A DNA stretch of 64,000 nucleotides from Octopus sinensis (taxonomy: Eukaryota). The notes below the pieces were generated by a model. The model saw only the letters and a list, made by a program, of their open reading frames with translations, had not been told where the DNA came from and did no database searches. The position numbers were made by a program, and so were the translations under genes. The stretch spans positions 37,324,001-37,388,000 of the forward strand of contig NC_043014.1 of assembly GCF_006345805.1 (NCBI RefSeq), given 5' to 3'. Shown here one piece after another: positions 1,551 to 63,593 of this stretch (the stretch's first letter is position 1; every line of letters begins with the position of its first letter).

Positions 1551-1559
1551 TTGGATGTT

Positions 1560-8030: not shown

Positions 8031-8046
8031 TAGTATGTTTGTAAGT

Positions 8047-8430
8047 GGAGGCACAATGGCCCAGTGGTTAGGGCCATGGACTCGCAGTCTTAGGATCGCA
8101 GTTTCGATTCCCAAACCAGGTATTGTGAGTGTTTATTGAGCAAAAACACCTAAAGCTACACAAGGCTCCAGTAGGGGGTGGTGGTGAACCCTGCTGTACT
8201 CTTTCACCACAACATTCTCTCACTCTTTCTTCTTGTTTCTGTTGTACCTGTATTTCAAAGGGCCAGCCTTGTCACATTCTGTGTCACGCTAAATCTCCCC
8301 AAGAACTACGTTAAGGGTGCACATGTCTGTGGAGTGCTCAGCCACTTGCACGTTAATTTCACGAGCAGGCTGTTCTGTGGATTGGATCAACTGGAACACT
8401 CGTCGTCATAACCGATGGAGAGCCAACCAT
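8047..8430 (+). mobile_element. tRNA-derived SINE
   Basis: Head GGAGGCACAATGGCCCAGTGGTTAGGG (A box) and GTTTCGATTCCC (B box). Homologous to the minus-strand copy at 22170-22603. Confidence 0.8.
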
Positions 8431-9270
8431 GTTTGTAAACATTAAATGGTTACATTCACTTAATAAATAATTAATTTTAATGGATACTATATCAGTTTTG
8501 ATAATTAGTATACCAGTTCAATCAACTGCATTGAATTATAGTATTAAGCAGCTGCATATTGCCAAAGCACTAGTATCCTTAATGTAATCCTTAGGGAGAC
8601 TCAGTATGATAATATATGTAAGTGCATGAGTCTTCCAGAGTCACTTGCATCATTAATAAAATCTTCAGGCAGAATTAGTGTGGTGCAGTGTAATATGTAT
8701 CAAAGCTAGTTCTCTGAATTACAGTCCTTCTGATGGACTTCTATCCAATTTTCTGTCGACAAAATTCTTTTCACAAGGATTGAGTTAATCCAAGGCTCTG
8801 ACAGAAGATATCTGTCCAAGGAACTGCACAGTGGGACTGGATTTGGGACCTCATGATTGGGAAGTAAACTTCATAACCATTTAGCCATGTCAGCACTTAC
8901 ACACACACAACATTGATAACAACAGCAGCAGCAATTTAGGTTTCATTAGAAGGTTGGGGAAGGAACAAGGTTTCTGAACGTTGTGATTGCTGACTTTTCA
9001 AATATAAATGATGTGGTTCAACTCCAGGTCAATGGATAAGGTTTGAATACTCAACAGTTTTGAACATATAGTTGTTTAGGGACAATGGCAATAGATTTTT
9101 AAATTCTTCCTTCTTTACAAATTTGGTTTTAATATCTAATTTTTGACTTCACCAACACTATTTCAAATGTATCTATAGTAGAAGATACATACAGCGGCAC
9201 ATTGGGCAAATGACTTCTACTATAGCCTTGTGAGTGAATTTGGTAGACAGAAACTTGAAAGAAGCCCATC

Positions 9271-9314
<44 letters not shown>

Positions 9315-9317
<3 letters not shown>

Positions 9318-11131: not shown

Positions 11132-11143
11132 TATATATATATA

Positions 11144-12179
11144 CTAGCATTAAAGACCCATCGTTGCCGGGTCATAGTGCTAGTGCATGTATATATGTGT
11201 ATATATATGTGTACATATTACATGTACATCTATATATATACATCTACACATAAAATACAAAATACAAAGTTATATCTTGATATCGCTAGTGATAACAATA
11301 CTCAAAATATATAACAGACTGGAATTGTTAGCCCGTCACTTGTAATTTCGATCAATTGTATCTTGTCCTCCCTCTTGTATAGAAGTGTGGCTACAATCCA
11401 GCCTACCTCTACTTCTGGGGGGACATTTTTAATTTTTATCCGGGACATCCTATGTCCCAGATATAAAGGTAAAAATAAAATATTTCCACTTTACAAGTAC
11501 GAGTCGAGTACTCCCTTGCACGCTCTGTTGACTCGAACCTTGCTTCTATTGTGGCGAATTTACCGCCTCTGATTAGATACCTTTCATAGTCGCACCAAGA
11601 CACTTTTCGAAGGTGCTTTCCTCCATGTATTCAAATCTTTTTTCTCTACATTGTATACTTTATAGACAATAGTCTTTTCTTTAATTTAATTTTTTATTAT
11701 TCATCTGGACTATTCCATTTCTGCACGCTAATTTTATTTTTAATTTATTCTCATTCATGTGAAACCACTTATTCAAGTTCAAATCACTGATGCAAATTTA
11801 TACCAATTGCTATTTTTACTTTTGTTATGTTACGATTATATTATACGTTAGTTTGATTTTACTTATTACTTACTACATATAATTCAATTATTATTATTAT
11901 TTTTATTGTTTAAGTGAAAGCATCTGACATAAAATAGAGAAATGTTTTTGTTTCACTTTTAACACGTAATACTGAAATAGTGGAGAAGATATGATATTGC
12001 TATGGGCTCGCTCTAGGCAAGAACTTGAACATTTGTTTTGCCCATGAAAGTACATGGACCCTAAGTAAGGCATGTGTAAAATTTGAATGGAATTGTTTGT
12101 GTAGTTCTCAAGTTTTAGGGAAACACACAGACAGACAGAGAGACAGACAGACACATTCTCAGTTTTATATATATAAAGA
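11144..12179 (-). mobile_element. Non-autonomous Helitron (Lep1-like), uninterrupted copy
   Basis: On the minus strand: A|TCTTTATATATATAAAACTGAGAATGTG(TCTG)n 5' end, and a 3' hairpin GACCCGGCAACGATGGGTC followed by CTAG|T. Inserted between A and T. Paralogs at 53543-55860 and 57873-58373. Confidence 0.85.
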
Positions 12180-12854
12180 TAGATATATATGTGTGGGTGT
12201 GTGTGAGTTCTTTGTGTCTGTGTTTGTCCCCTTCCACTGCTTGACGACCAGTTTGGGTTTGTTTACAACCCTGTAACTTAGTGATTCAGCAAAAAAGGCT
12301 GATAGAATAAGTATTAGGTTTAACCCTTTGGGATTTACATGATTCTGTCAAATGTAATGCTTTTCATTCACATTGCTTTGAATAAAGCTGCTTTATTTTG
12401 TAGCTTAGAGATTTTGATAATGTGATTGTATATTTTTAGAATGATATTGTAGGGTAAGTGTGAGAGGCAGGATCTAGCCAGTTTGAACATAAAACATGTA
12501 GAATATTTGGGCCTGATATATCCAATTTAAATGCTAAAACATAAAAAAAAAGTACTGGGGTTGTTACATTTGACTAAAATTCTTCAAGGTGGTGCCCTAG
12601 CATGGCCACAGTCTAATGACAGAAACAAGTAAAAGATAAAAGATAAAATTTTTGATTTTACCAACACTATTTCAAATGTACCTTTGTGCAGGCATTGGGA
12701 AATTATGTTTTTTGTTTCTATGTTATATAAAACCTTGTCTTACAGTTCATTAACACTTTTGATAATAATCTGCATGTGACTGCTTCTGGTTCAATAACTG
12801 CCAACTTTCAGATTTTAAGTAGTCTAAATTAAAGCTTTCTTCCATCAAAATTTC

Positions 12855-13120
12855 ATCTTATCATCATTTTCATTTAGTGTCCGCTTTCCATGCTAGCATG
12901 GGTTGGACGGTTCAACTGGGTTCTGGGAGGCCAGAAGGCTGCACCAGGCCCAGTCTGATCTGGCAATGTTTCTACAGCTGGATGCCCTTCCTAACACCAA
13001 CCACTCCGTGAGTGTAGTGGATGCTTTTTACGTGCCACCGGCACAGGTGCCAGATGGTGCTGGCAAACAGCCACGGTCGGATGGTGCTTTTTACGTGCCA
13101 CCGGCACGGGGGCCAGGCGA
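12855..13120 (-). mobile_element. RTE-tail-only fragment or SINE
   Basis: Reverse complement of the RTE 3' UTR/tail (CCATGCTAGCATGGGTTGGACGG..GCTGGATGCCCTTCCTAAC). Confidence 0.8.
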
Positions 13121-13627
13121 GGCTACTATAATTAATAACACTTACTACTACAGGAACAAGGCCTGAGATTTTGAGGGACAGGGCTAGTTGCTGAAGTGGT
13201 AAATATTTTATCAATCCTGAAAGGACGAAAGACAAAATTGACCTCAATGGAATTTGAACTCAGAACATAAAGACAGAAGAAATGCTACTAAGCATTTTGT
13301 CCAGTGTGCTAAAGATTTTGCCAGCTTGCTGCCTTAAACATCAGCTTAATAATGACAAAGTGATTTTACTAAATACTTCATTACTTTCAAAATTTACTGA
13401 AACAGAGGCAGTGCATTTCAACAGAAGTGTTGTAACAAAACGATTAAAAATAACATACATTTTACATGTGAAATTCTGATAAGAACGTAATCAAGTAAGT
13501 TTATTACTCTTCCTGTTAGCAAAATCCAGAGAAATGATTGGATATAAAATATCCCATTTTGAATCAAAACAAACACATCAATCAACATCATCTAATGAGA
13601 CAGATAAACCTTCAAATATCTACTTAC

Positions 13628-13776
13628 CAAACCTAGTTTTGTGAATCACAGTCTGTTTGCATCGATTACATTTTTTGATCTTTATCTTAGAGCAACATTC
13701 TTCACATATTATCCTATGTCGGCAGGGGTGGAATTTTATAGAAACTCGATTATCTCCACATACATAACACTCATAC
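13628..13776 (-). CDS. RING (C3HC4) exon of the ankyrin-RING gene
   Basis: tttcttttacag|G TAT GAG TGT..TTT G|gtaagt, 149 nt, phase 2 to 1. Encodes YECYVCGDNRVSIKFHPCRHRIICEECCSKIKIKKCNRCKQTVIHKTRF, with C3HC4 spacing of the IAP/Mind bomb type. Confidence 0.9.
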
Positions 13777-14989
13777 CTGTAAAAGAAACACACACAGACT
13801 CACCAATAAAATCATCTGATAACAAATATTTCATTGAATATAAATGTAGAAAGAATATTTTTTATAATGTTACCATAAAATATCATTTGAAGAGAACATT
13901 TTAAATTATTATTAAACCTTTGGAGATGTAGCTAACTGATGCACATTTTAAAACAAGACAGAATTATAAGATACGAAAACAATATCTAAATCTAATAAAC
14001 ACAGAAAAATGTATATATTTTCTTTACAGTGCAAAACAACAGATTGACAGATCAGCCTAGTAATGGTGTTAAGAAATATTTTCTTTCAAAACACACACAT
14101 GTTCGCACAGAGTTAATTATCCATGTGCAACTAAAAATAAAACATGGAGATTATATGAATATGAAGAGATTCTACAGTAATAATCCATTAAAATAATGGA
14201 TTATAATGACTGACTGTGAGCAAGCTTGATAATTATTTGAGGTGTTGTGATTATGTGTAGAGCTAATTGAAATGTTTTAGGCAATGAATGAATGGGTGAA
14301 TCATTGGTTAAAGGTTAAGCTACTATGTTTTTTTCCATCACTGAAACGTCAATCAAAACCTGTTTTGGCAGCAAGCAGATGTCTTCAACTTTGATATAAT
14401 CATGAGCAATGACTTATGTCTTTGAAAATGCCTTTATAGCTTTATAGTTCATTCTATTTGACTTTATCAGTCCATCAGTTTCAGCTATTACCCTCTGTTG
14501 TATCTTTTATGGATGGATGTTTAACTCTTTAGCATTTAGATTACTCTGTCAAATGTAGTGCTTATTTATTGATATTGTTTTGAATTAATCATAGCTTTGA
14601 GATGTTGATGATGTGGTTGTATACATTTAGAATGACAATATAGAGTAGATGTGAGAAGTTAGATCTAGCCAGTTTAAATATAAAACAAGCAGTACATTTT
14701 GACCAGATATGGCTGGTTTAAATGGGAAAGGGTTGAATACTCAAACTTTCATCACTGTTTCATTGTTGTCAGGTAAGAAAGGTATAAAGGCATACAGATA
14801 GCGAGCTACATACTGACTACTGTTTAGAGAAGAGACCAACATAGCAATATACAGCAGAGGCAAAGTTATAGTATTAGCAGTAACAATCCACTGTATTTGT
14901 GGAAGTAAAAATCAACACATAATTATGCATAAAATATAAAATACAAAGCAACTTGCTGGTGTATTTAGCAATCATTAGGGAATACTTAC

Positions 14990-15156
14990 ACTTTTACAAG
15001 ATATAGTTCCAGTCTGCTTTTCAAATCTGAATTCTTGATGATGTCAAGTGGTGTGGTGTTGTTTTTGTTTTTATGATAGAAGTTTGCTCCTTGTGTTGCC
15101 AGATATCCAGCTACAACTATACTGGATAATCTATCTTCTTTGAGCTGACAGGAAAT
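14990..15156 (-). CDS. Last ankyrin-repeat exon of the ankyrin-RING gene
   Basis: tttcatcatttatag|ATT TCC..AAA GT|gtaagt, 167 nt, phase 0 to 2. Encodes ISCQLKEDRLSSIVVAGYLATQGANFYHKNKNNTTPLDIIKNSDLKSRLELYLVK. Confidence 0.9.
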
Positions 15157-15581
15157 CTATAAATGATGAAATATATATTTATATATACAATAAGACTATT
15201 GTTCAATATTCTTTTTCTTTGCCCAACACATTTTAGCGTCAACAAATTTTAGTTTTATTCAAGAAAATTCCAGTTATATTCTGAAGTGTCAAAGTAATAT
15301 CAACTAGTCTGCCATTGGTTGTTACAGTCTTAATCTATAGCTCTCATTAGGCTGGTTCTGGGATTTAAAACTAACAAGGGTTGTGATGAAGTTTGAGAGA
15401 ACCAGCTTATATCTAATTTACTTCCATAATCTAAGAACAAAGTATTTGCATACGAATCAAGCAAACTATGAAGCCAAATATTGATGAAAATATCAGAGAT
15501 AACCAATTGATATGTTTATGTATGATAAACACTAGCAAATTTGAGAAGTAGAACTTGTTCTTTGAATGCTTTACAGTATGC

Positions 15582-16765
15582 ATGAGGGGTACCCAAAAGT
15601 AACTGGAAACATTCTCTATGGGCTAAGCCCATTGCAGTTCAGGCTTCTGCTACTAGATGCCACTTGATGCCACCTTCAGAAATCAGTCTCCCAACCAGTG
15701 GTGTCATGTGAAGTTGTACCGCCATGTGGTGTGCCTTTGTTTTGCAGTGATTCTCTTCTGTTCATCAATTTTTGCAATGGCTGAAACAAAGGAACAGCAT
15801 GCTACCATGAAATTCTGTTTCCTGTTGGGGAAAATAGCAGCTGAAACAGTTGTCGTGCTTCAAACAGCTTACAAGGATGCTACCTTGAGCAAAACACAAG
15901 TTTATGAGTGGTTTTCACATTTTAGGACCAACCTCGTTCAGGGTGACCACAGAACTCTGGAATGAATGAAAACATCACAAAAATTTATGAACTGATCTTG
16001 GAGGACCATTACTGAACAATTTATGAACTTGATATTACTGGTGTAACCTGGAGCTCCTGCCAACAAATTTTGAGCAAGGAATTGTGAATGAAATGAGTTA
16101 CATCAAAATTTGTGACTCGCTTGCTCACTGAATATCAAAAAGCAGTCATGACTGAATGGATGTCATGAATTGAAAGAATAGTTGGATGTTGATCCAAATC
16201 TTTTTCTGAAGGTCAATATTGGTGACAAAAGCTGGTGCTATGACTACAACCCAGAAACAAAGCAACAATTAAGTTAATGGAAGCATTCAATGTCACCATA
16301 CCTCAAAAAAGCACGTCAAGCAAAGTCCAATATCAAGACAATGTTGATTCATTTCATTGATGTGAAAGGAATTGTCCACACAGAATTTGTTTCTCCTGGT
16401 CAAACTGCTAAGCAGACATTTTACTTGGCAGTTCTGAAGTGTCTGCAAGACACAGTAAGACAAAAACTCCCCAACCTGTGGCAAAAGTGGAGTGTGGTGG
16501 CTTTATCATGACAATGCACCTGCACACACTGTCTTGAGTGTGAGACAGTTTTTGAAAAAATAGAATGACCTCGCTTATCCATCCTCTCTATTCACCTGAT
16601 CTTGCTCCCTGTTCCTCCAAATAAAAAAGGTCCTGAAAGGAAAACGTTTTGCAGATGTGGAAGAAGTGAAAAAAAAAAATACAACGGAGGCATTAAAAGG
16701 CATCACTTTGCAAGAGTTCATGGACTGCTTCAAACAGTGGAAAAAGAGGTAAGACATTAGTGTTA
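15582..16765 (+). mobile_element. Degenerate mariner transposon
   Basis: Fragments MAETKEQHATMKFCFLLGKIAAETV..LSKTQVYEWFSHF, GDKSWCYDYNPETKQ and KARQAKSNIKTMLIHFIDVKGIVH, with multiple stops and frameshifts. Confidence 0.9.
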
Positions 16766-17567
16766 CAGTGATGCACATCAACAAGTTTCACTTGAGAAAT
16801 TTTTAAACTGTTACTCTGATAGATAATTCTAGTAGCGCTATATAGGTGGTTGTTAAGATAGCTTACAAAATAGACATAGCAGCAGCAGCCACTACCATCA
16901 CAGCAGCAGCCACAGTCTGATTTGACTTGGTTTCTAAGGCTGGATGCCCTTCTTAATGCCAATCACTTTATAGTGTGTACTGTGTGCTTTTAACATGCCA
17001 CTGACACAGGACTGTTACAGGCCAATCCTTTTCACCAGGGGATGCAGCAGCAGCCACTGCCTCCTCCTCCCCCTCTTCATATTCCTCCTCTCTATCCTCC
17101 CCACAATTACTCATCCCCTAACTGCACTTTTATTTACTTTTTGTTTCCTCCTGATATAAGCTAAAAGATGATGTCTGGAAGACACACAATGTCACAGCAC
17201 ACCTTTGATGCAAGTCTGATAAAGTGCTACTCTAATGTCTAAAACTACAAACATTACATAAATTTTGACTTTGAATTTTTGCATAAACTGGCATTGCAAG
17301 TAGAATTGGTACAGAAACAATTATAATGAATCATTAAAGATGTGTTAAAGAATTTCTTTGTCTTCTTATTACTTTGATTATAGTTTACTCTTCGCAAAAC
17401 CGACACAAGGGTGCAACCATCGTGGAACCAGGATTTTCTACACTTGAAGAATTTCAGCATTGGTTTGGAACCTGACAGTGTTGATAGCCCAGAATTTGGG
17501 GTACTTCTCTGGAAAAATCCTATCTTTATACCCTACCAGGACCTAAGATATATATATATGTATATAT

Positions 17568-18050
17568 CAGGGTGTGTCAATTTTAATAACTTACTAAAAA
17601 TCTAATTTGGCAGTGAAATTATTGAGTCTTTTTACTCCCTGACTTGAGATATATATATACCAAAATGGATTAACACAACTCTAACTTACATCAATCTTAT
17701 CCTAAATTTTCAATATGGTGTTGTTTTGAAACAATAACTTAAAATTTACATGAAAAACTGATTAGACTCAAAATATCACTCTTATATTATCTTTTAATTA
17801 GTAAAATGAATCATATCATCTTTTAATTGGTTAAATGAATTTTTACTCTTTCAGATATTCACAAGATGTCAACACTGAAGACTAGAGGCTAGATGTCATC
17901 CCACTTGAGCCTGTTAATTTGTACATGGAAAGAGCTTCTTGTATCAGAGCTTCCAATAGTGAGAGATATTTTAAAACTTGGGTTACTACTTTGGGAACAA
18001 AATTCCAAGGATGAATTTTCCTATTTACTCCCAAAAATTGACACACCCTA
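17568..18050. mobile_element. Tc1/mariner-type MITE
   Basis: Terminal inverted repeats CAGGGTGTGTCAATTTT / AAAATTGACACACCCT in a TA-rich context; no coding capacity. Confidence 0.6.
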
Positions 18051-18069
18051 GTATATATATATATGCAAA

Positions 18070-18350
18070 TTGACTTGCATCAATCTTATTGAAGACACAG
18101 TATACAAATTCAATTTAGGACAGATTTTTACCATAAAAAATCATTTGATATGTTCTTCAAAGAATTTAATATATGCTATTAAATGTGAAGGATGTAATGA
18201 AGATTACATAGGTCAAAGTTTACTCTCCGAAATAGACTGACCATTCACCACAAAAAATACGAGACCCCAGTACTAGACAGATTCCACTGAGTGGACACAG
18301 ACATATGTGCAAAAAAGAACTCCCCCAAATTCCAAGTCTTCCCACTCTAC
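18070..18350 (+). mobile_element. Penelope-like GIY-YIG endonuclease fragment
   Basis: Reads YAIKCEGCNEDYIGQS, then in a shifted frame LRNRLTIHHKK..RQIPLSGH. Confidence 0.6.
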
Positions 18351-18661
18351 CTTTGTTCAGTGAAGTTGTTTAGATCTAAACTTGATTGGTGGCATTACTT
18401 ACTCTCCTACAATGTTGCTACAAATTTTGATGTAACATTTTTCTACTGGATCAAATCTCAATATTTTTATGCTAAAATATAGCTAGGGACCAGTCCTCTT
18501 CAAAAATGTTAACAGTTTTCAATTTGATTAAGAACTGAATTAGCGACAAGCTCTGAAAGATGCTGCATGTAAGTAAATTGCGGCCTTAAGAATATTATTC
18601 AACTACTACTGTAGTTGAAAGGTATCTGTCTCACATAAAAAAAAAAAATTCTGAAACTTAC

Positions 18662-18871
18662 CTCATCTAAAATTTCAAGATGTTTACTTTTAGAGTGAAA
18701 CATTTTCTCCCTCAATGCAATATGCAAGCAATTGTCACCATCTTTATTTATAGCGTCAAGATCTGCTCCTTTTAATACTAACATCTGCATGATCTCAAGG
18801 TTACCCTTAGAAACAGCCTGGAGGAATGGTGTCTGATCATGAGTGTTACGAATATCAAATTCCACTTCAGC
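18662..18871 (-). CDS. Ankyrin-repeat exon of the ankyrin-RING gene
   Basis: tttcatttccacaaag|GCT GAA..GAT GAG|gtaagt, 210 nt, phase 0 to 0. Encodes AEVEFDIRNTHDQTPFLQAVSKGNLEIMQMLVLKGADLDAINKDGDNCLHIALREKMFHSKSKHLEILDE. Confidence 0.92.
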
Positions 18872-20845: not shown

Positions 20846-20882
20846 CTGGGATAGTATCAGTTTCACTATATCTTGGTGTTGC
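20846..20882 (-). CDS. 37-nt linking exon of the ankyrin-RING gene
   Basis: tttcccttttataatttcag|G CAA CAC CAA GAT ATA GTG AAA CTG ATA CTA TCC CAG|gttagt, phase 2 to 0. It completes the ankyrin repeat TSLQCAVLR-QHQDIVKLILSQ-AEVEF. Confidence 0.9.
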
Positions 20883-23262: not shown

Positions 23263-24095
23263 CGTAGAACTGCACACTGTAGGGATGTTTCATTATATTT
23301 ATCCTTTTTATTAATGTCAGCTCCAGACTGTATTAACAAGTCTACTATATCAGTAAATCCTTTATTGCAGGCAATGTGGAGTGCTGTATAACCACTGGCA
23401 CTGACCATATTAATGTCAGATTTGGACTGTATTAAAAAGTTTGCTATATCAGTACATTCTTTATCGCAGGCTATGTGAAGTGCCGTGTAACCATGGCTGT
23501 TGACAATATTGACATCAGCATCAAACTTTACTAACAACTTTACTACATCAACAAATTTTTTACTGCAAGCTATGTGAAGAGCTGTGTCACCACTGGTACT
23601 GATCATATTAATGTCAGATTTGGACTGTATTAAAAAGTTTGCTATATCAGTACATTCTTCATCGCAGGCTATGTGAAGTGCCGTGTGACCATGGCTGTTG
23701 ACAATATTGACATCAGCATCAAACTTTACTAACAACTTTACTACATCAACAAATTTTTTACTGCAAGCTATGTGAAGAGCTGTGTCACCAGTGGTACTGA
23801 CCATATTAATGTCAGATTTGAATCGTATTAACAAGTCTGCTATATCAGTAAATCCTTTATCGCAGGCTATGTGGAGTGCTGTGAAACCATTGTTCCTTAC
23901 AACATTGCTGTCTTGTTCAGACTGTAAAATCAACTTTACTGACTTAATGTGCCCAACACAACATGCCAGATGAAGAGCTGTGTCATAACCCATCTTTACC
24001 ACACAAAATTTCAGTAACAACTTAACCATGTCAACATTATTACTATCACAGGCGAGATCCAGAAGGTTTGTATTATTACCAACTTTTTTACGGGT
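23263..24095 (-). CDS. Large ankyrin-repeat exon (about 8 repeats) of a Mind bomb-like ankyrin-RING E3 ligase
   Basis: ctatctcttttcag|ACC CGT AAA..CTA CG|gtaagt, 833 nt, phase 0 to 2. Repeated G[DFHY]TALH[IL]AC..KLL..DIN motifs with 33-aa period. Confidence 0.95.
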
Positions 24096-34570: not shown

Positions 34571-34597
34571 GGGTGATGGTGGTGGCATTCAACGTAC
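34571..34597 (-). pseudogene. Dead micro-exon A1
   Basis: Same flanks as the live cassettes, but acceptor AG>AT, donor GT>AT, and GTA CGT TGA stop in phase 0. Confidence 0.7.
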
Positions 34598-36120: not shown

Positions 36121-36144
36121 CTGTCTTGCAGCAGTATGGCTCAT
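36121..36144 (-). CDS. Micro-exon B1 (24 nt, MSHTAARQ)
   Basis: ctcatctctttttctccatag|ATGAGCCATACTGCTGCAAGACAG|gtaagg. Open in phase 0; expression not shown. Confidence 0.7.
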
Positions 36145-38383: not shown

Positions 38384-38410
38384 GGGTGATGGTGGTGGCA
38401 TTCAACATAC
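38384..38410 (-). pseudogene. Dead micro-exon A2
   Basis: Duplicate of A1: AG>AT, GT>AT, GTA TGT TGA stop. Confidence 0.7.
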
Positions 38411-39816: not shown

Positions 39817-39840
39817 CTGTATTGGACTGCTTTCAAAGAA
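39817..39840 (-). CDS. Micro-exon B2 (24 nt, FFESSPIQ)
   Basis: ctcatctctttttctccatag|TTCTTTGAAAGCAGTCCAATACAG|gtaagg. Open in phase 0, stop in phase 1. Confidence 0.7.
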
Positions 39841-42101: not shown

Positions 42102-42143
42102 GTAAGGCATTGACTCCCTGCATCGAGTCTTTCTCATGCATAC
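42102..42143 (-). CDS. Micro-exon C1 (42 nt, VCMRKTRCRESMPY)
   Basis: cacttctttttctccatag|GTATGCATGAGAAAGACTCGATGCAGGGAGTCAATGCCTTAC|gtaagt. Confidence 0.7.
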
Positions 42144-51103: not shown

Positions 51104-51135
51104 GGGTATGCTTTATGATAGTTTCTCGGGTATAC
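51104..51135 (-). CDS. Micro-exon C2 (32 nt as assembled, VYPRNYHKAY+CC)
   Basis: cacttctttttctccatag|GTATACCCGAGAAACTATCATAAAGCATACCC|gtaagt. Splice sites intact, but one base short of 33. Confidence 0.45.
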
Positions 51136-53466
51136 CTATGGAGAAAAAGAAGTGAGATATATATATGTATAGATATATATATATATATATATAGATATAT
51201 ATATTATATATATATATATATAAATATATGTATATATTTATATATATAAATATATATATAGAGAGCGAGAGTGAGATAAATATATACTCATACATAGAGA
51301 CATGCACACACATGTGTGTATTTGTGCATTCTTATGTATAGGCCACATGTATATCAGCCAGAATCTTTTCTCTTTGTATAATGTTTAAAAAGAAATATGC
51401 TGATGAAAATATACGTGTGTATTAATATGGCATTAATAATTAATTAGAATAATAATTTCTACATTTATGAATTTGTGTTACAAGATTCCTTGTGTGAAAC
51501 CGTGTGTTGAAAGATATTGCTGTATATGGGGATGGTCATATTTTTTTGATTTTTGCCAAATAGATACGTGCACTATATATTCGTTCTTCACACATTTATT
51601 ACTGTTCTTACTCTAACTCAAGTCCATCATCCAGAAACCTTTTGTCACACATCCGTGACCTCTTCAGCAGCACTTACTGTATTTGTGTATGCTCTGCTTA
51701 TTCCATTCTAACACCTCTTCAGTGACACTTGCCGTATTCGTGTGTGCTCTTGCTCTGCTTATTCCATTCTGTTCTTCTATCGTGGGTCACATATGATGGG
51801 TCACATCATAGAAGAACAGAATGGAATAAGCAGAACAAGAGCACACACAAATAAGGAAAGTGTTGCTGAAGAGGTTAGCTACAGATGTATGACGAAAGGT
51901 TTCTGGACGTTGGATGTTGGTTAAAATAGCAAGAGTAATAAACAAGTGAAGAGCAAATATATAGTGCATGTGTCTATTTGGCATGAAAATGAAAAAAGAT
52001 GACCATCCCAAAATACAACAATACAATAATAATAATTGAATACTATGACTTGTTCTTGTAAGCTCACTTAACTGTGTAGCCTACATACATTATCCACATC
52101 TTTTTTATTATTGTTCTTAAATTCATCATACTTTTACCTAAAGGTCTGCCACAGAAGGCAATGAATGACAAGAAAAATCATCATATCTTTAGCAGCCATT
52201 TATGGAGAATCTGCCTGTGATAGGTGAAAACTAAAGACATACTTGAAATTAGCATAAAAAATAGTTCTGAATCACGGAATCACATATACGCAAACAATCA
52301 GCACTTATTTGATTTAGAAGTACAGACTTGTATAATCGTAGATATATATATATATAAATAATTGTGTGTGTGTGTGTGTGCATGCATGTCTGTGTGTGTG
52401 TGTGTGCAAGTGTTTTTATGTATATATATGTGTGTGTGTGTATATTTAAGTGTGTATGTGTGTGTGTGTGTATGTATATATATATATATATAGATAGATA
52501 TAGATATATATGAAAAAATACTGTTAAGCATTTCGCCTGGCACGCTATCGTTTCTACCAGCTCACTGCCTTAGACAGTAAACATTCATTTTAGAAATATA
52601 TTCTTTATTCTTATTGCTTAAGCATTACTCCCTTACTTCCTTACTGACATGAAATTTCGTAACATTTTACTTCATAACTCTTTTTCTACTCATTTTTGTT
52701 CAATGCAACTAGCGATTCTCAATTCCTCGTGCATTTTTCTATCATTTAAGACTAACAAAAGTATACTTTAAATATAAAATTTTAAAATTTATGTTAATTG
52801 AAGATGAATATCTGCCTACTTCTCCCCACCCAATTTGAGGTCACATTATATTTTAATGTAACTTTTTTTCTACTGAACCAACTCTCAAACTATTTATGCC
52901 AAACTATAGCTGAGGAGGTGTCCTCTTTAAAACTATTAACAGTTTGCAATTTAGTTGAGAACTGAATTAGTGGTGAAGCTTGGAAGCTGCTGTGTTTGAT
53001 GAAATGGTGGACTTGAGAATATATTCAGCCAGTACTGTGGTTGAATGATATTAGAACTTCTTGGAAGCTCAATCAAATTGCTGGCCTACATACGTTATTC
53101 ACATCATTTCTTATTATTGATCTCGTCTTTTGTTCTTAATTTCATTATACGTTTACCTAGAAGTCTGCCACAAAAGGCAACAAAATAACCAGTAAAATCA
53201 TATCTTTACCAAACATTTATGAAAAATCTGTATGTGATAGGCAAAGATTAAAACCATTATTGAAATCAGTATGAAAAATGGTTCAGAATCATCTATAAGT
53301 AGACAATCATAATTTATTTCATTTAAAATTGCAAACTTGTGTAATCATAGATATTTATAAATAACTGTGTTTGTGTGTGTGTGTGTGTAAATGTTTTAAA
53401 TATTTTTTTCTAAGTGAAAACAATGCAATTAATAAATATTAATAACACAGGTTGATGGTTACTTAC

Positions 53467-53502
53467 ATCGTACATTACTTGTCCATCATATCCTCGGAAT
53501 TC
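53467..53502 (-). CDS. Micro-exon C3 (36 nt, EFRGYDGQVMYD)
   Basis: cacttccttttctccatag|GAATTCCGAGGATATGATGGACAAGTAATGTACGAT|gtaagt. Only phase 0 is open. Confidence 0.75.
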
Positions 53503-53542
53503 CTATGGAGAAAAGGAAGTGAGATATATATATATAGATATA

Positions 53543-55860
53543 CTAGCATTAAGGACCCGTCATTGCCGAGTATAGTGCTAGTGCATGTGTATATGTGTAT
53601 ATATATGTGTACATATAACATGTACATCTATATATATACATCTACACATAAAATACAAAATACAAAGTTATATCTTGATATTGCTAGTGATAACAATACT
53701 CAAAATATATAACTGACTGGAATTGTTAGCCCGTCTCTTCTAATTTCGATCAATTGTATCTTGTCCTCCCTCTTGTATAGAAGTGTGGCTACAATCCAGC
53801 CTACCTCTACTTTGGGGTGGGGAGATGGGCATTAAAAATTTTTAGGGATGTCCTACGTCCCAGATATAAAGGTAAAAATAAAATATTTCCACTTTGCAAG
53901 TTCGAGTCGAGTACTCCCTTGCACGCTCCGTTGACTCGAACCTTCCTTCTATTGTGGCGAATTTACCGCCTCTGATTAGATAGCTTTCATAGTCACACCA
54001 CGACACTTTTCGAAGGTGCTTTCCTCCATGTGTTTTATTATTACCCACTAGGGGTGAACATAGAGGGGACAACACAACCTGGCTGAGGTGCTTCCTGCGG
54101 TTTGGGTTGGGGTTGGGGTTGGCATTCCGCCCTTACATGACCCTTCTTACCGCAGCCGAAGCACCTCGGCTTTCTGCCCTCTACGAAAACTGTTACTCTA
54201 TCTTCTTCACTTATTTTTAGAGTTTCTGGAATCTCCTCCAGTGTTTGAATTTCTGCCTGAATGGCTATTACTATCCGCTGCCCTTTCCAGAATTCCTCCT
54301 CCTCTACTGTGGCCTGGAGGATGTTTATTTTTTCCCCCAGGCCTACCATGACTGCTGCCACCAGACATTCGGCATCTGCCTCTGGCGGAATGTTATTCAT
54401 CGTGATTTTTGATGTTCTTTTTCCTCTATACAAGGGGAGGAGAACAATGTTCTCCGCTTTTATTGGCTCCATAGACAGTTTTTTAGCTATCTCCTCTGTT
54501 GTGAAACGCACCTCTACTGTGCCGTATCTCTTTCCTCTGTTGATGTATGTGATCTTGTCCATTAATGGTTTTAAACAATTCTCGATTTTTTTTTCCTCAA
54601 TTTTTTGTATCATTTTGCTTGTCGTATTAAAGGTCTTATAGATTATTCTTCTTTTTTCGATTTCTTCATGTTTTTGGGCGTTTGTGACCACTGTCACTTC
54701 CGTGCCCTCTTTTGTAATACAGTCCGCATATTTCTTTAAGTCTTTGACGTTTATTTTTTTGATTTTCTTACCAGCTACTTCTGAGAATTTTTTCGCTGGT
54801 GCTGGTGCTGGTGCAGGGGTTTCCTTTTCCTTTGGCGCCACCGCCTCTTTTTTCTTTGGTGACACCGCCTCTTTTTTCTTTGGCGACACCACCGGAGATT
54901 CTTCTTCACTAGTCACGGGAGAATATGAGATGGGGGATTCTATCTCGAACAACTGGCTTAACAAGCCCTTGGCACAACCAAGATAAGTGATATTTTTTTT
55001 CCCCCACGGAGGGGGAACACCACCACGAAGTCCTCGCGCGAAGGCTGACTTCAACAGTTGTACAGCAATAAACAAAGACAGGTAGACACACAGTAGAATA
55101 TAACGGAGAAAATATACACTAAGGAAAATTGTAATAACTCACTACACACGCGATTTGCGTTCCGCCATGTGCTCAAATCTTATTTTTCTCTACATCGTAT
55201 ACTTTATAGACAATAGTCTTTTCTTTAATTTAATTTTTTATTATCCATCTGGACAATTCCATTTCTGCACGCTAATTTTATGTTTAATTTATTCCCATTT
55301 ATGTGAAACCACTTATTCAAGTTCAAATCATTGATGCAATTTTATACCAATTGCTATTTTTACTTTTGTTATGTTACAATTATATTATACTTTAGTTTGA
55401 TTTTAATTATTACTTACTACATATAATTCAATTGTTATTATTATTTTTATTGTTAAAGTGAAAGTATCTGACATAAAATAGAGAAACGTTTTTGTTTCAC
55501 TTTTAACACGTAATACTGAAATAGTGGAGAAGATATGATATTGCTATGGGCTCGCTCTTGGCAAGAAGTTGAACATTTTTTTGCCCATGAAAATACATGG
55601 ACCCTAAGTAAGGCATGTATAAAATTTGAATGGAATTGGTTGTGTAGTTCTCAAGTTTCAGGAAATCGTAGTGGGGAAGATATGATATTGCTGTGGGCTC
55701 GCCCTAGGCTAAAAGTTAAAAGTTATTTTTGCCGATGACACTCTCCGGACCCTAAGTAAGGCATGAGTAAAGTTTGAATGAAATTGGTTGTGTAGTTCTC
55801 AAGTTTTAGGGAAACACAGAGACAGACAGACACACTTTCTCAGTTTTATATATATAAAGA
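53543..55860 (-). mobile_element. Non-autonomous Helitron interrupted by a Tx1-like insertion
   Basis: Same termini and body as 11144-12179; split at CCATGTG. Confidence 0.85.
54033..55164 (-). mobile_element. ORF1-only (HAL1-like) Tx1-type retroelement with a 7-bp TSD
   Basis: TSD CCATGTG at 54026-54032 and 55165-55171. Open frame 54041-55075 has RRIIYK..RGKRYGTVEVRF..VTVFVEGRKPRCFGCGKKGHVRAEC (CCHC) and reads straight into the 3' tail. The frame starts at TTG, with no early ATG. Confidence 0.85.
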
Positions 55861-57794
55861 GATATATATATAGTGCATATATAGACAAATATATACTCAT
55901 ACATAGAGACATGCAGACACATGTGTGTATTTGTGCATTCTTATGTATAGGCCACACGTATATCAGCCAGAATCTTTTCTCTTTGTATAATGTTTAAAAA
56001 GAAATATGCTGATGAAAATATACGTGTGTATTAATATGGCATTAATAATTAATTAGAATAATAATTTCTACATTTATGAATTTGTGTTGCAAGATTCCTT
56101 GTGTGAAACCGTGTGTTGAAAGATATTGCTGTATATGGGGATGGTCATACTTTTTTGTTTTTTTGCCAAATAGATACGTGCACTATATATTCGTTCTTCA
56201 CCCATTTATTACTGTTCTTACTCTAACTCATGTCCATCGTCCAGAAACCTTTTGTCACACATCTGTGACCTCTTCAGCAACACTTACTGTATTTGTGTGT
56301 GCTCTGCTTATTCCATTCTAAAACCTCTTCAGTGACACTTTCCGTATTCATGTGTGCTCTTGCTCTGCTTATTCCATTCTGTTCTTCTATGGTGGGTCAC
56401 ATATGATGTGTCACATCATAGAAGAACAGAATGGAATAAGCAGAACAAGAGCACACACAAATAAGGAAAGTGTTGCTGAAGAGGTTAGTTACAGATGTAT
56501 GACGAAAGGTTTCTGGACGTTGGATGTTAGTTAAAATAGCAAGAGTAATAAACAAGTGAAGAGCAAATATATAGTGCACGTGTTTATTTGGCATGAAAAT
56601 GAAAAAAAGATGACCAAATACAACAATACCATAATAATAATTGATTATTATTAAAATACAGATGAAATACCGCTTCTAAAATACAAAATTTTATCAAAAG
56701 CATTAAGAATAAACCCTGTTTATGTGACATATTCTACCAGTATCGGAAGTTTGAAAGTGTTTAGTTGAAAAAAATTAATTAAATAATCTGTATATCAAAG
56801 TCAACCTCGCTGAAATTTGAACTAAAAAACGTAAAGACAGATGAAATACCGTTAAGCATTTCGCCTGGCACGCCATCGTTTCTACCAGCTCACTGCCTTA
56901 GAAAGTAAACATTCATTTTAGAAATATATTATTTATTCTTATTGCTTAAGCATTACTCCCTTACTTCCTTACTGACATGAAATTTCGTAACATTTTACTT
57001 CATAACTCTTTTTCTACTCATTTTTGTTCAATGCAACTAGCGATTCTCAATTCTTCGTGCATTTTTCTATCATTTAAGACTAAGAAAAGTATACTTTTAA
57101 TTTTAAATTCTAAAATTCATGTTAATTGAGGATGAATATCTGCCTACTGCTCCCCACTCACCTTGAGGTCACATTATAATTTAATGTAACTTTTTTTCTA
57201 CTGAACCAACTCTCAAACTATTTATGCCAAACTATAGCTGAGGAGATGACCTCTTTAAAACTATTAACAGTTTGCAATTTAGTTGAGAACTGAATTAGTG
57301 GTGAAGCTTGGAAGCTGCTGTCTTTGATGAAATGGTGGACTTGAGAATATATTCAGCCAGTACCGTGGTTGAATGATATTAGAACTTCTTGGAAGCTCAA
57401 TCAAATTGCTGGCCTACATACGTTATTCACATCATTTCTTATTATTGATCTCGTCTTTTGTTCTTAATTTCATTATACGTTTACCTAGAAGTCTGCCACA
57501 AAAGGCAACAAAATAACCAGTAAAATCATATTTTAACCAAACATTTATGAAAAATCTGTATGTGATAGGCAAAGATTAAAACCATTATTGAAATCAGTAT
57601 GAAAAATGGTTCAGAATCACCTATAAGTAGACAATCATAATTTATTTCATTTAAAATTGCAAACTTGTGTAATCATAGATATTTATAAATAACTGTGTTT
57701 GTGTGTGTGTGTGTGTAAATGTTTTAAATATTTTTTTCTAAGTGAAAACAATGCAATTAATAAATATTAATAACACAGGTTGATGGTTACTTAC

Positions 57795-57830
57795 ATGGTG
57801 TATTACTTGTTCATCATATCCTCGGAATTC
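57795..57830 (-). CDS. Micro-exon C4 (36 nt, EFRGYDEQVIHH)
   Basis: cacttccttttctccatag|GAATTCCGAGGATATGATGAACAAGTAATACACCAT|gtaagt. Confidence 0.75.
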
Positions 57831-57872
57831 CTATGGAGAAAAGGAAGTGAGATATATATATATATAGATATA

Positions 57873-58373
57873 CTAGCATTAAGGACCCGTCGTTGCCGAG
57901 TATAGTGCTAGTGCATGTGTATATATATGTGTACATATAACATGTACATCTATATATATACATCTACGCATAAAATACAAAATACAAAGTTATATCTTGA
58001 TATTGCTAGTGATAACAATACTCAAAATATATAACAGACTGGAATTGTTAGCCCGTCTTTTCTAATTTCGATCAATTGTATCTTGTCCTCCCTCTTGTAT
58101 AGAAGTGTGGCTACAATCCAGCCTACCTCTACTTGGGGGGGGGGGGGGGGCATTAAAAATTTTTTTTTAGGGATGTCCTACATCCCAGATATAAAGGTAA
58201 AAATAAAATATTTCCACTTTGCAAGTTCGAGTCGAGTACTCCCTTGCACGCTCCGTTGACTCGAATCTTCCTTCTATTGTGGCGAATTTACCACCTCTGA
58301 TTAGATACCTTTTAATAGTCACACCACGACACTTTTTGAAGGTGCTTTCCTCCATGTGTTCAAATCTGATTTC
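57873..58373 (-). mobile_element. Helitron 3' half (duplicate of 53543-54032)
   Basis: Same position next to the micro-exon acceptor as the 53543 copy; ends at a second Tx1-like insertion. Confidence 0.85.
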
Positions 58374-63526: not shown

Positions 63527-63571
63527 CTGGAATATTCTTGCCTGAGTGTCATCAGTGTTTCTTATGCATAC
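63527..63571 (-). CDS. Micro-exon C5 (45 nt, VCIRNTDDTQARIFQ)
   Basis: cacttccttttctccatag|GTATGCATAAGAAACACTGATGACACTCAGGCAAGAATATTCCAG|gtaagt. Only phase 0 is open. Confidence 0.75.
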
Positions 63572-63593
63572 CTATGGAGAAAAGGAAGTGAGA

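What the first reader, a model, noticed from the sequence alone, without database searches (positions are those of the whole stretch)
53418..57900. Micro-exons C3 and C4: four substitutions, all amino-acid changing, inside almost identical flanks
Seen: the 36-nt exons differ at GGA>GAA, ATG>ATA, TAC>CAC and GAT>CAT, so 4 of 4 changes are non-synonymous. The 49 nt on the donor side are identical, and the roughly 68 nt on the acceptor side differ at one base. Inference: diversifying selection or a localised mutational process acts on the exon alone, the reverse of the usual exon/intron pattern. The numbers are small.
Basis: partly seen in the sequence, partly recalled or inferred. Interest (0 to 1): 0.8.

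Follow-up and report, generated by a model that had tools for sequence, protein, structure and literature searches.

The report
Hypervariable micro-exon linker array, octopus ligase
C3 and C4 are two real, annotated 36-base coding exons in a tandem array of tiny optional exons that build a floppy linker inside an octopus ankyrin-RING ubiquitin ligase, and across the array the exons have diverged many times faster than the almost identical introns around them.

Summary
On the minus strand, C3 (53467-53502, EFRGYDGQVMYD) and C4 (57795-57830, EFRGYDEQVIHH) differ at four bases, all amino-acid changing. Their flanks are nearly identical.

The window is Octopus sinensis chromosome CM016876.1. Both exons are coding exons of NCBI model XP_036366777.1, an ankyrin-repeat protein with two C-terminal RING fingers.

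They belong to an array of nine units, each with the same branch point, pyrimidine tract and AG upstream and GTAAGTAACC downstream. Six units are intact and are 24-45 nt long, all multiples of three and open in frame 0. They encode a linker between two ankyrin blocks that AlphaFold2 models with low confidence. Two annotated isoforms use different exon subsets.

The C3/C4 pair alone is weak evidence: P about 0.002-0.013 for the pre-specified exon, but not significant as a scan. The array-wide pattern is strong:
- Exon identity is 45-64% against 88-96% for flanks.
- Between O. sinensis and O. vulgaris, linker-coding bases differ at 9/126 against 1.33% in introns, all nonsynonymous.
- Splice-dead pseudo-exons are frozen.

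Best reading: protein-level diversifying selection on cassette micro-exons, against a background of module duplication and gene conversion. Conversion alone remains a serious rival.

The parts
53467..53502 (-). Micro-exon C3 (U3), 36 nt, phase 0-0, EFRGYDGQVMYD. Residues 180-191 of XP_036366777.1 (isoform X1).
57795..57830 (-). Micro-exon C4 (U2), 36 nt, phase 0-0, EFRGYDEQVIHH. Residues 168-179 of isoform X1.
63527..63571 (-). Micro-exon U1, 45 nt, VCIRNTDDTQARIFQ. First unit of the array, present in both annotated isoforms and in O. vulgaris models. It resembles the start of an ankyrin repeat.
51104..51135 (-). Unit U4, 32 nt, intact AG and GTAAGT but frame-breaking. It is in neither annotated isoform. 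It may be a pseudo-exon, a poison exon or an assembly indel.
42102..42143 (-). Micro-exon U5, 42 nt, VCMRKTRCRESMPY, used in isoform X2. It has 3 nonsynonymous differences from the O. vulgaris orthologue inside flanks with no substitution in +-100 nt.
39817..39840 (-). Micro-exon U6, 24 nt, FFESSPIQ, donor GTAAGG, not in X1 or X2. Its first 16-18 nt differ completely from the positional orthologue in O. vulgaris. It matches the exon of the paralogous gene at 23 of 24 nt.
38384..38410 (-). Pseudo-exon U7, 27 nt (AT in place of AG, ATAAGT in place of GTAAGT, in-frame stop). Identical in O. vulgaris.
36121..36144 (-). Micro-exon U8, 24 nt, MSHTAARQ, used in isoform X2. It has 1 nonsynonymous difference from O. 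vulgaris.
34571..34597 (-). Pseudo-exon U9, 27 nt, 26/27 identical to U7 and identical in O. vulgaris.
53503..53523 (-). Conserved 3' splice-site block of C3 (CTCAC branch-point-like motif, pyrimidine tract, AG), bounded upstream by a (TA)n microsatellite. The same block is at 57831-57851 for C4 and at all other units.
52577..53466 (-). Donor-side intron segment of about 890 nt after C3, starting GTAAGTAACCATCAACC. It is 91-96% identical in six modules. The C4 copy is 56905-57794. It contains a mosaic tract at 52756-52834, where C3 matches U1/U4 and C4 matches U5/U7/paralogue.
53540..54034 (.). 495-nt dispersed repeat inserted next to the C3 acceptor. Copies lie at 57870-58360 (next to C4) and 11141-11631. 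It shows that C3 and C4 come from one duplication that included this insertion.
23263..24095 (-). Large ankyrin exon that follows the array (phase-0 acceptor). Its first 15 nt (24081-24095, TRKKV) finish the linker and carry 4 O. sinensis-specific substitutions.
20846..20881 (-). Constitutive 36-nt micro-exon (QHQDIVKLILSQ, an ankyrin helix). It has no differences from O. vulgaris and serves as an internal control.
4299..18871 (-). Remaining 3' exons of the gene, as mapped to codon level: 18662-18871 (ankyrin), 14989-15156, 13629-13775 (RING 1) and 4299-4502 (RING 2).

Best explanation
C3 and C4 are two members of a lineage-specific tandem array of symmetric cassette micro-exons. All intact units are in phase 0-0 and have lengths that are multiples of three. 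The array lies in an Octopus sinensis gene for an ankyrin-repeat protein with two C-terminal RING fingers, annotated as 'ankyrin-3-like' or 'MIB2-like'.

The exons are spliced in different subsets between an N-terminal block of ankyrin repeats and a central block of about ten repeats. Together with the first five codons of the next exon, they encode a linker of variable length and sequence that is probably disordered.

The array grew by duplication of whole modules (exon plus about 2.3 kb of intron). Exchange between modules and with the neighbouring paralogue keeps the introns alike.

The linker-coding bases change several-fold faster than introns and synonymous sites, keep the reading frame, and so far change only amino acids. 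I read this as diversifying (positive) selection on the linker peptide of a rapidly evolving E3 ligase. Alternative splicing adds combinatorial variety.

- Shown here: the exon status, the gene, the array anatomy and the rate contrast.
- Inferred: selection as the cause.
- Unknown: what the linker does. It may tune the spacing of the two ankyrin blocks or contribute to substrate recognition.
For: **Gene and exon status.**
- The window equals the minus strand of L001, from O. sinensis CM016876.1.
- Isoform X1 reads ...GDSVK|U1|C4|C3|TRKKVGNN..., and isoform X2 reads ...|U1|U5|U8|....
- Pfam finds ankyrin repeats plus two zf-C3HC4_3 domains.

**Coding character.**
- All six intact units are multiples of three. 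For five independent lengths the chance probability is 0.004.
- Only frame 0 is open in all of them (shuffle P = 0.016).
- The preceding exon and the ankyrin exon join the array in phase 0.

**Rate contrast among paralogous units.**
- Exons are 45-64% identical against 88-96% for flanks.
- The 100-nt window containing U6/U8 has 14 substitutions, against about 3 per 100 nt in neighbouring windows.

**Rate contrast between species.**
- The intron substitution rate is 671/50485, or 1.33%.
- Linker-coding bases differ at 9/126, binomial P = 5e-5.
- Against the constitutive exons of the same gene (15/1080), Fisher P = 4e-4. Against +-100 nt flanks, the pooled count is 13/162 vs 28/981, P = 0.003.
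- All 13 changes are nonsynonymous.

**Controls.**
- Splice-dead pseudo-exons U7 and U9 and the constitutive 36-nt exon show no interspecies differences.

**Direction of change and absence of a template.**
- The four changes at the 5' end of the ankyrin exon are derived in O. sinensis. O. vulgaris and both species' paralogues share the other state.
- No donor sequence was found in about 350 kb of related loci.

**Structure.** The AlphaFold2 model has pLDDT below 50 for residues 153-199, between two confident ankyrin stacks.

**Intron constraint.** The module intron is only about 78% identical to the single O. bimaculoides unit. Orthologous introns elsewhere in the gene are about 86-93% identical. 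The introns are therefore alike because of recent duplication or exchange, not because of function. No Rfam family was found in the window.
Against: - The numbers are small. 13 nonsynonymous and 0 synonymous changes is only P of about 0.06 against the expected 81% (my calculation from the site counts).
- C3/C4 alone fails a scan test.
- Changes are clustered: 3 of the 4 in C3/C4 lie within 5 nt, and 4 lie within 10 nt in the ankyrin exon. This pattern also fits multinucleotide mutation events.
- Gene conversion is demonstrably active. It can mimic positive selection and makes the introns an imperfect clock.
- The whole gene evolves almost neutrally, with omega of about 0.7-0.9. Weak constraint is therefore part of the picture.
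- I saw no transcript reads. Exon use rests on NCBI and O. vulgaris gene models, and the O. vulgaris annotation combined transcript, protein and ab initio evidence, so it may not be independent.
- A database search for transcript-derived fragments found nothing.
- O. vulgaris lacks C3, C4 and U4 altogether, so these exons are dispensable at least in that species.
Confidence: 0.55

Rival explanations
1. Concerted evolution without positive selection. The exon variants are old or are copied from other modules and paralogues. Frequent short-tract gene conversion and unequal exchange homogenise the near-identical introns. Because the flanks are already alike, exchanges are visible only in the heterologous exons. 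The 'fast exon' is then an illusion created by a reset intron clock and by templated swaps.
For: - The O. sinensis U6 exon differs from its positional orthologue in O. vulgaris at about 12 of the first 16 nt. It matches the paralogous gene's exon at 23 of 24 nt, with flanks at least 97% identical in all copies.
- The substitution cluster at 52756-52834 is a mosaic tract, in which C3 matches U1/U4 and C4 matches U5/U7/paralogue.
- The tree of donor-side introns is star-like, and C3 does not group with C4.
- The two copies of the supermodule have segments of very different divergence.
Against: - No donor was found for the C3/C4, U5/V5, U8/V8 or ankyrin-exon differences in about 350 kb covering both paralogues in two species.
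- The four ankyrin-exon changes are derived in O. sinensis while all three other copies agree.
- Orthologous modules are 97-99% identical while paralogous ones are about 91-96%, so homogenisation since the species split has been limited.
- Conversion does not explain how the variants arose in frame in the first place.
- Pseudo-exons in the same modules do not vary.
Confidence: 0.22
2. A localised mutational process, such as multinucleotide mutation or error-prone repair at a fragile site next to the (TA)n and (CA)n microsatellites, hits the short segment between the splice sites. Selection only filters out frame-breaking outcomes.
For: - The changes are clustered. In C3/C4, positions 53472-53473 form an adjacent GT>AC pair and 53469 lies 3 nt away.
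- There are 4 changes within 10 nt at the start of the ankyrin exon.
- Every unit lies between a (TA)n tract and a (CA)n tract.
- U4 is a frame-breaking 32-nt version.
Against: - A DNA-level process should not stop at the AG and the GT. It should also hit the pseudo-exons U7 and U9, which sit in the same sequence context but are invariant.
- It would have to act as well at the 5' end of a large exon about 12 kb beyond the last unit of the array.
- Six of seven units with intact splice sites keep length and frame.
Confidence: 0.1
3. The C3/C4 pair is chance in a weakly constrained, dispensable linker. The two exons are young duplicates drifting neutrally, and four hits in 36 nt is small-number noise.
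For: - The scan statistic is not significant (P = 0.9), and other clusters exist in the same module.
- 4 of 4 nonsynonymous has P of about 0.4.
- Gene-wide omega is about 0.7-0.9.
- O. vulgaris lacks these exons.
Against: - With the exon pre-specified, P is 0.013. Against the +-100 nt flanks it is about 0.002.
- The same excess recurs independently in U5, U8, U6, the ankyrin-exon start and all paralogous comparisons.
Confidence: 0.08
4. Assembly artefact. C3 and C4 are two haplotypes, or a mis-joined repeat, in the long-read O. sinensis assembly, and the differences are allelic or consensus errors.
For: - O. vulgaris has no C3, C4 or U4, and its U1-to-U5 intron is only 757 nt.
- The BUSCO-type completeness listed for the O. 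sinensis assembly is lower than for the other octopus genomes.
- U4's odd length of 32 nt could be an indel error.
Against: - The two modules sit in different contexts. Different retroelement ORFs lie upstream (54041-55075 vs 58598-59950), and one intron segment is present before C3 but absent before C4.
- Their flanks differ by 2.6%, about twice the species divergence.
- The differences are substitutions, not homopolymer indels.
- The NCBI model joins C4 and C3 in one transcript.
Confidence: 0.05

Closest known systems
Schistosome micro-exon genes (MEGs)
   Same: Both have runs of very short symmetric exons with lengths that are multiples of three, so any subset keeps the frame. Both generate protein variation by exon skipping and show accelerated amino-acid evolution (bioRxiv 10.1101/2023.06.21.545858; PMC4350168).
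   Different: MEGs encode small secreted proteins built almost wholly of micro-exons, and they are specific to flatworms. Here the micro-exons supply only about 40 of 724 residues of an ankyrin-RING protein, whose N-terminus shows no hydrophobic leader by inspection. They are also tandem copies of one module with near-identical introns.
Tandem arrays of mutually exclusive exons (Dscam1 exon clusters, myosin heavy chain and similar)
   Same: The alternative exons arose by tandem exon duplication and diversify one region of a protein through splicing (from established knowledge).
   Different: Those exons have equal length, encode a folded domain segment, and are used exactly one per mRNA. Here the lengths are 24-45 nt, several units are used together (U1+C4+C3 or U1+U5+U8), and the product is modelled with low confidence.
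Accelerated exon evolution with conserved introns in venom and defence gene families (snake phospholipase A2 and three-finger families, cone-snail peptide genes)
   Same: The exon/intron conservation pattern is reversed, and replacement changes predominate (from established knowledge, not tested here).
   Different: Those are secreted multigene families in which whole genes duplicate. Here the duplicated unit is an exon-intron module inside one gene for a protein that shows no evident secretion signal.
Titin PEVK and nebulin exon-duplication regions
   Same: Both are tandemly duplicated small symmetric exons, duplicated together with their introns. Both encode a disordered or repetitive spacer whose length is set by differential splicing (from established knowledge).
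   Different: PEVK exons keep a common motif and composition. Here the exon sequences are nearly unrelated to one another.
Mind bomb (MIB1/MIB2) E3 ubiquitin ligases
   Same: Ankyrin repeats are followed by C-terminal C3HC4 RING fingers, and sources name the relatives 'MIB2-like'.
   Different: No MIB/HERC2 or ZZ domains are detected. A micro-exon linker interrupts the ankyrin region. The gene evolves fast and is duplicated in the O. vulgaris/O. sinensis lineage.

Membership tests
Schistosome-type micro-exon genes (MEG) | Symmetric micro-exons with lengths that are multiples of three | tested here: met
   Six intact units of 45, 36, 36, 42, 24 and 24 nt, with only frame 0 open in all.
Schistosome-type micro-exon genes (MEG) | Most of the coding sequence is made of micro-exons | tested here: not met
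   About 37-39 of 722-724 residues come from the array. The rest is ordinary ankyrin and RING exons.
Schistosome-type micro-exon genes (MEG) | Secreted product with a signal peptide | tested here: inconclusive
   No signal-peptide predictor was available. The N-terminus MNYGFGTGSGVSTFKIDGRTY has no hydrophobic stretch by inspection.
Mutually exclusive exon cluster (Dscam-like) | Tandem homologous alternative exons | tested here: met
   Nine units share splice-site blocks and introns. The 5' halves of the exons are still alignable.
Mutually exclusive exon cluster (Dscam-like) | Exactly one exon of the cluster per mRNA, and equal exon lengths | tested here: not met
   Isoform X1 contains U1, C4 and C3, and isoform X2 contains U1, U5 and U8. 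Lengths range from 24 to 45 nt.
Mutually exclusive exon cluster (Dscam-like) | Docking-site and selector RNA pairing | not tested
   Only a palindrome of about 455 nt in each module intron was noted. No pairing analysis was done.
Mind bomb-type E3 ligase | Ankyrin repeats followed by C-terminal RING fingers | tested here: met
   Pfam finds ankyrin families (E down to 1e-100) and zf-C3HC4_3 with two stretches (E = 2e-14).
Mind bomb-type E3 ligase | N-terminal MIB/HERC2 and ZZ domains | tested here: not met
   Neither domain appears in the Pfam scan of the full protein at E <= 0.01.
Genes with accelerated exon evolution under positive selection | Exon divergence exceeds intron and synonymous divergence | tested here: met
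   9/126 vs 1.33% between species (P = 5e-5). Paralogous exons are 45-64% identical against 88-96% for flanks.
Genes with accelerated exon evolution under positive selection | dN significantly greater than dS, with conversion excluded | tested here: inconclusive
   There are 13 nonsynonymous and 0 synonymous changes, but only about 31 synonymous sites. Conversion is shown for at least one unit.
Differentially spliced tandem exon array encoding a disordered spacer (PEVK-like) | Product is disordered, and length is varied by splicing | tested here: met
   pLDDT is below 50 for residues 153-199. Two annotated isoforms carry different exon sets. No transcript reads were seen.
Intron-hosted small RNA array (snoRNA or miRNA host gene), considered as a reason for conserved introns | A recognisable small RNA, or intron conservation across species | tested here: not met
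   There is no Rfam hit at gathering score in the window. The module intron is only about 78% identical to O. bimaculoides, which is lower than ordinary introns of the gene.

The most novel reading that the evidence does not exclude
The array is a dedicated diversification device. It would combine a cassette of interchangeable micro-exons, exon-swapping conversion between modules and paralogues, and combinatorial splicing. Together these would give an intracellular ankyrin-RING ubiquitin ligase a rapidly changing recognition or spacer loop. That would be an arms-race receptor comparable in logic to fast-evolving restriction-factor E3 ligases, built with micro-exon architecture and arising within the last few million years in one octopus lineage.
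Probability: 0.12. Interest if true: 0.8.

Novelty: new variant of a known kind. Interest (0 to 1): 0.55.

Why it matters
If exon-restricted diversification is confirmed, this locus is a compact natural experiment. It holds near-identical introns, frozen pseudo-exons and a conserved micro-exon in the same gene as internal controls. It also shows a 21-kb presence/absence difference between species that split about 2.5 million years ago (date as cited in PMC10700109).

The locus would let selection, gene conversion and clustered mutation be separated using ordinary resequencing and RNA-seq. It would also extend the micro-exon route to protein variation, known mainly from secreted schistosome proteins, to an intracellular ubiquitin ligase in a cephalopod.

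If the pattern turns out to be mainly conversion, the locus is a clear warning case for dN/dS scans on tandem exon arrays.

Tried and rejected
1. **Concatenated-peptide search.** I searched the protein database with the concatenated micro-exon peptides. No candidate was returned, because the length filter excluded the 722-aa models. The gene was found only after I recognised ankyrin and RING exons downstream on the same strand.
2. **Transcript-fragment search.** A 146-aa query spanning the linker, meant to catch transcript-derived fragments and other isoforms, found nothing.
3. **Exact look-ups.** Look-ups of the ankyrin ORF and of isoform X2 found nothing, because only the longest product per gene is on record.
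4. **Introns conserved because they host small RNAs.** Rejected. There is no Rfam hit, and the module intron is poorly conserved in O. bimaculoides.
5. **Variable segments as spacers between copies of a transposon carrying the splice sites.** Rejected. The 5' halves of the exons are homologous, lengths and frame are kept, and the exons are in gene models.
6. **Recursive-splice sites.** AG|GTATGC occurs at U1, U4 and U5, so I considered this. I did not pursue it, because these exons are retained in annotated mRNAs.
7. **Local donors for exon variants.** I found a donor only for U6.
8. **The O. sinensis paralogue array.** It lies outside the locus I could fetch.
9. **Literature searches.** Searches for octopus or cephalopod micro-exon arrays found nothing relevant.
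10. **A phage-collection search with the 495-nt repeat.** This was pointless and returned nothing.

Full report
**1. What is at the coordinates**

Read on the minus strand, 53467-53502 and 57795-57830 are two 36-nt segments. Each is preceded by ctcacttccttttctccatag and followed by gtaagtaaccatcaacc. Only frame 0 is open, giving EFRGYDGQVMYD (C3) and EFRGYDEQVIHH (C4).

A gapped alignment of the two modules shows exactly four exon differences, at 53483, 53473, 53472 and 53469. All four change the amino acid. The donor-side intron is identical for 174 nt. On the acceptor side, the first 68 nt carry one substitution (53562) and a 2-nt TA indel (53537).

**2. Is the pair more than chance?**

The homologous module is 52516-54034 vs 56844-58360, with 1510 aligned columns and 42 substitutions.
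- Non-exon columns differ at 38/1474 (2.6%), and the exon differs at 4/36.
- For the pre-specified exon, the binomial P is 0.013 and Fisher P is 0.016.
- Against the +-100 nt flanks only, with one substitution, the hypergeometric P is about 0.002. This is my calculation from the alignment. The short re-alignment miscounts the acceptor flank because of the TA indel.
- As a blind scan the cluster is unremarkable. 90% of uniform permutations give a 36-nt window with at least four hits, and two other clusters exist.

One of those clusters, 52756-52834, is not new mutation at all. At six sites C3 carries the state of modules U1/U4, and C4 carries the state of U5/U7 and the paralogue. This marks a tract exchanged between modules. 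The pair alone is therefore suggestive, not decisive.

**3. The array**

The same acceptor and donor blocks occur nine times on the minus strand between 34.5 and 63.6 kb.

| Unit | Position (approx.) | Length | Peptide or status |
|---|---|---|---|
| U1 | 63.5 kb | 45 nt | VCIRNTDDTQARIFQ |
| C4 | 57.8 kb | 36 nt | EFRGYDEQVIHH |
| C3 | 53.5 kb | 36 nt | EFRGYDGQVMYD |
| U4 | 51.1 kb | 32 nt | frame-breaking |
| U5 | 42.1 kb | 42 nt | VCMRKTRCRESMPY |
| U6 | 39.8 kb | 24 nt | FFESSPIQ |
| U7 | 38.4 kb | 27 nt | no AG, no GT, stop in frame |
| U8 | 36.1 kb | 24 nt | MSHTAARQ |
| U9 | 34.6 kb | 27 nt | copy of U7 |

A compact module is about 2.36 kb. Longer spacings are due to retroelement and repeat insertions.

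About 890 nt of intron after each donor, and the branch point, pyrimidine tract and AG block before each exon, are 88-96% identical between modules. The exons themselves are 45-64% identical, which is close to what unrelated sequences give. Hypervariability starts within a few bases of the AG and ends at the GT.

The six intact units are all multiples of three (P = 0.004 for five independent lengths). Frame 0 alone is open in all of them (shuffle P = 0.016).

**4. The gene**

Downstream on the same strand I found ankyrin and RING-finger exons. A protein search with them returned 'ankyrin-3-like isoform X2 [Octopus sinensis]' at 96% identity, together with O. vulgaris and O. bimaculoides 'MIB2-like' relatives.
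- The X2 sequence contains ...GDSVK|VCIRNTDDTQARIFQ|VCMRKTRCRESMPY|MSHTAARQ|TRKKVGNN....
- Its cluster-mate isoform X1 (XP_036366777.1) contains ...|VCIRNTDDTQARIFQ|EFRGYDEQVIHH|EFRGYDGQVMYD|TRKKVGNN....

The window is an exact stretch of O. sinensis CM016876.1, with window x = 99013 - L001 coordinate. Exact mapping places every piece on the predicted exons. C3 and C4 are thus annotated coding exons, used together in one isoform and skipped in the other.

The protein has many ankyrin repeats and two C3HC4 RING fingers, but no MIB/HERC2 or ZZ domain.

An AlphaFold2 model has pLDDT below 50 for residues 153-199. That segment is exactly the micro-exon-encoded part plus the first residues of the next exon. 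It lies between two confident ankyrin stacks at 59-147 and 202-535.

U1 still resembles the start of an ankyrin repeat (compare FDIRNTHDQTPF in a later exon). The array therefore probably grew from an exon encoding the loop between two repeats. This last point is inference.

**5. Comparison with relatives**

I fetched the O. vulgaris orthologue (L002), its inverted neighbouring paralogue (L004), the single O. bimaculoides gene (L003) and part of the O. sinensis paralogue (L005).

*Array content.* O. vulgaris has orthologues of U1, U5, U6, U7, U8 and U9 but not of C4, C3 or U4. Its U1-to-U5 intron is 757 nt, against 21 kb in O. sinensis. C3/C4 flank divergence (2.6%) is about twice the interspecies intron divergence (1.33%, 671/50485). 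The duplication therefore probably predates the split, and O. vulgaris probably lost the block.

*Differences between orthologous units*:

| Unit | Differences from O. vulgaris | Note |
|---|---|---|
| U5 | 3/42 | no substitution in +-100 nt of flank |
| U1 | 1/45 | |
| U8 | 1/24 | |
| Pseudo-exons U7 and U9 | 0/54 | |
| Constitutive 36-nt exon (20846-20881) | 0/36 | |

*The ankyrin exon.* Its first 15 nt differ at four positions (TRKKV vs TPLKD). O. vulgaris and both paralogues share one state, so the O. sinensis state is derived. No donor was found.

*Pooled tests.*
- Linker-coding bases differ at 9/126 between species. The binomial P is 5e-5 against introns, and Fisher P is 4e-4 against the gene's other exons.
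- With C3/C4 included, the count is 13/162 against 28/981 in immediate flanks, P = 0.003.
- All 13 changes are nonsynonymous. With about 81% nonsynonymous sites, that alone is only P of about 0.06.

*Gene-wide rate.* The gene as a whole evolves fast:
- Against O. vulgaris, pN is 0.013 and pS is 0.018.
- Against O. bimaculoides, omega is about 0.8 once one misaligned exon is set aside.

**6. Evidence for exchange**

The O. sinensis U6 exon (TTCTTTGAAAGCAGTCCAATACAG) differs from its positional orthologue in O. vulgaris (ATAATCCATCATGCTGCAAGACAG) at about 12 of the first 16 nt. It matches the paralogue's exon (TTATTTG...) at 23 of 24 nt. All five aligned copies have flanks at least 97% identical.

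Two old exon types therefore exist, and one has replaced the other at this position in one lineage. The cause is either short-tract conversion or lineage sorting.

Three further observations show that the introns are not an undisturbed clock:
- the mosaic tract in the C3/C4 intron;
- the star-like intron tree, in which C3 does not pair with C4;
- the uneven divergence along the duplicated supermodule.

**7. What does not explain it**

- Intron function is unlikely. There is no Rfam family. The module intron is only about 78% identical to the one homologous, donor-less unit in O. bimaculoides, whereas ordinary introns of the gene are 86-93% identical.
- A DNA-level hotspot should not respect the AG and GT boundaries and should not spare the pseudo-exons.
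- Pure neutrality is contradicted by rates several-fold above those of introns, synonymous sites and the other exons.
- An assembly artefact is unlikely, given the different contexts of the two modules and the transcript model that joins them. I could not examine reads.

**8. Conclusion**

The best-supported account is a young, lineage-specific array of symmetric cassette micro-exons encoding a disordered, alternatively spliced linker of a fast-evolving ankyrin-RING ligase. The linker peptide is under diversifying selection, while duplication and conversion keep the introns alike.

The main rival is that conversion, together with old exon types, produces most of the contrast.

The closest known systems are the following:
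- schistosome micro-exon genes (bioRxiv 10.1101/2023.06.21.545858; PMC4350168);
- tandem alternative-exon clusters;
- venom-type accelerated exons;
- PEVK-like spacer arrays.

This locus shares features with each and meets the defining set of only the last, and loosely: the PEVK-like features tested were met, but its exons lack the shared motif. I found no paper describing such an array in cephalopods. The exons themselves are already in public annotation. What is new is the evolutionary pattern.

Noticed in passing
window 23309-24039 (ankyrin exon 23263-24095): The central ankyrin exon is itself a 99-bp tandem repeat, with one ankyrin repeat per unit. The O. sinensis exon encodes 278 residues and the O. 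vulgaris exon 212, a difference of exactly two repeats.
   Followed up: partly
window 24081-24095: There are four O. sinensis-specific substitutions within 10 nt at the very start of the large ankyrin exon (TRKKV vs TPLKD). O. vulgaris and both paralogues share the other state, and no donor copy was found.
   Followed up: yes
window 42144-63526 (L001 35487-56869) vs L002 34832-35588: There is a structural difference of about 21 kb between the sister species. O. vulgaris lacks modules C4, C3 and U4 and has a 757-nt intron where O. sinensis has 21 kb.
   Followed up: partly
window 51104-51135: Unit U4 has perfect splice signals but is 32 nt long, so its inclusion would shift the frame. It may be a poison exon, a recent pseudo-exon or an assembly indel.
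   Followed up: no
window 56151-56606; also 51515-52023 and the equivalent place in other modules: Each module intron contains an inverted repeat (palindrome) of about 455 nt, with inner arms 81 nt long, 89% complementary and 3 nt apart. It may be a MITE-like element or a structure relevant to splicing.
   Followed up: no
window 53540-54034, 57870-58360, 11141-11631: A 495-nt dispersed repeat lies directly upstream of the (TA)n and acceptor of both C3 and C4. A third copy lies in a distant intron and is also present at the orthologous O. vulgaris site.
   Followed up: partly
window 54041-55075 (-) and 58598-59950 (-): There are two different long ORFs with a CCHC zinc-knuckle-like motif and no Pfam match, probably retroelement gag-like genes. 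They are inserted upstream of C3 and C4 respectively. Other transposon remains include RT ORFs at 9230-10507 and 47478-49337 and a Tc1/mariner element at 30510-31535.
   Followed up: partly
window 63593-63860: A tRNA-SINE-like element with a (GAT)n tail is inserted immediately before the 21-nt acceptor block of U1. It is shared with O. vulgaris but absent from the paralogue's U1-like unit.
   Followed up: partly
L004 31831-31875 vs L002 34787-34831: The U1-type exon is identical (45/45) between the two O. vulgaris paralogous genes, although their flanking introns differ. Not every unit of the array is hypervariable.
   Followed up: partly
whole gene (window 4299-63571 and upstream in L001): The constitutive exons evolve almost neutrally, with omega of about 0.7 against O. 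vulgaris and about 0.8-0.9 against O. bimaculoides. The gene is duplicated as a convergent pair in the O. vulgaris/O. sinensis lineage only.
   Followed up: partly
window 1343-2989 (+) and 1-1500: There is a 548-aa asparagine-rich ORF with no Pfam match, next to a long (TG)n-rich low-complexity region. It was not examined.
   Followed up: no
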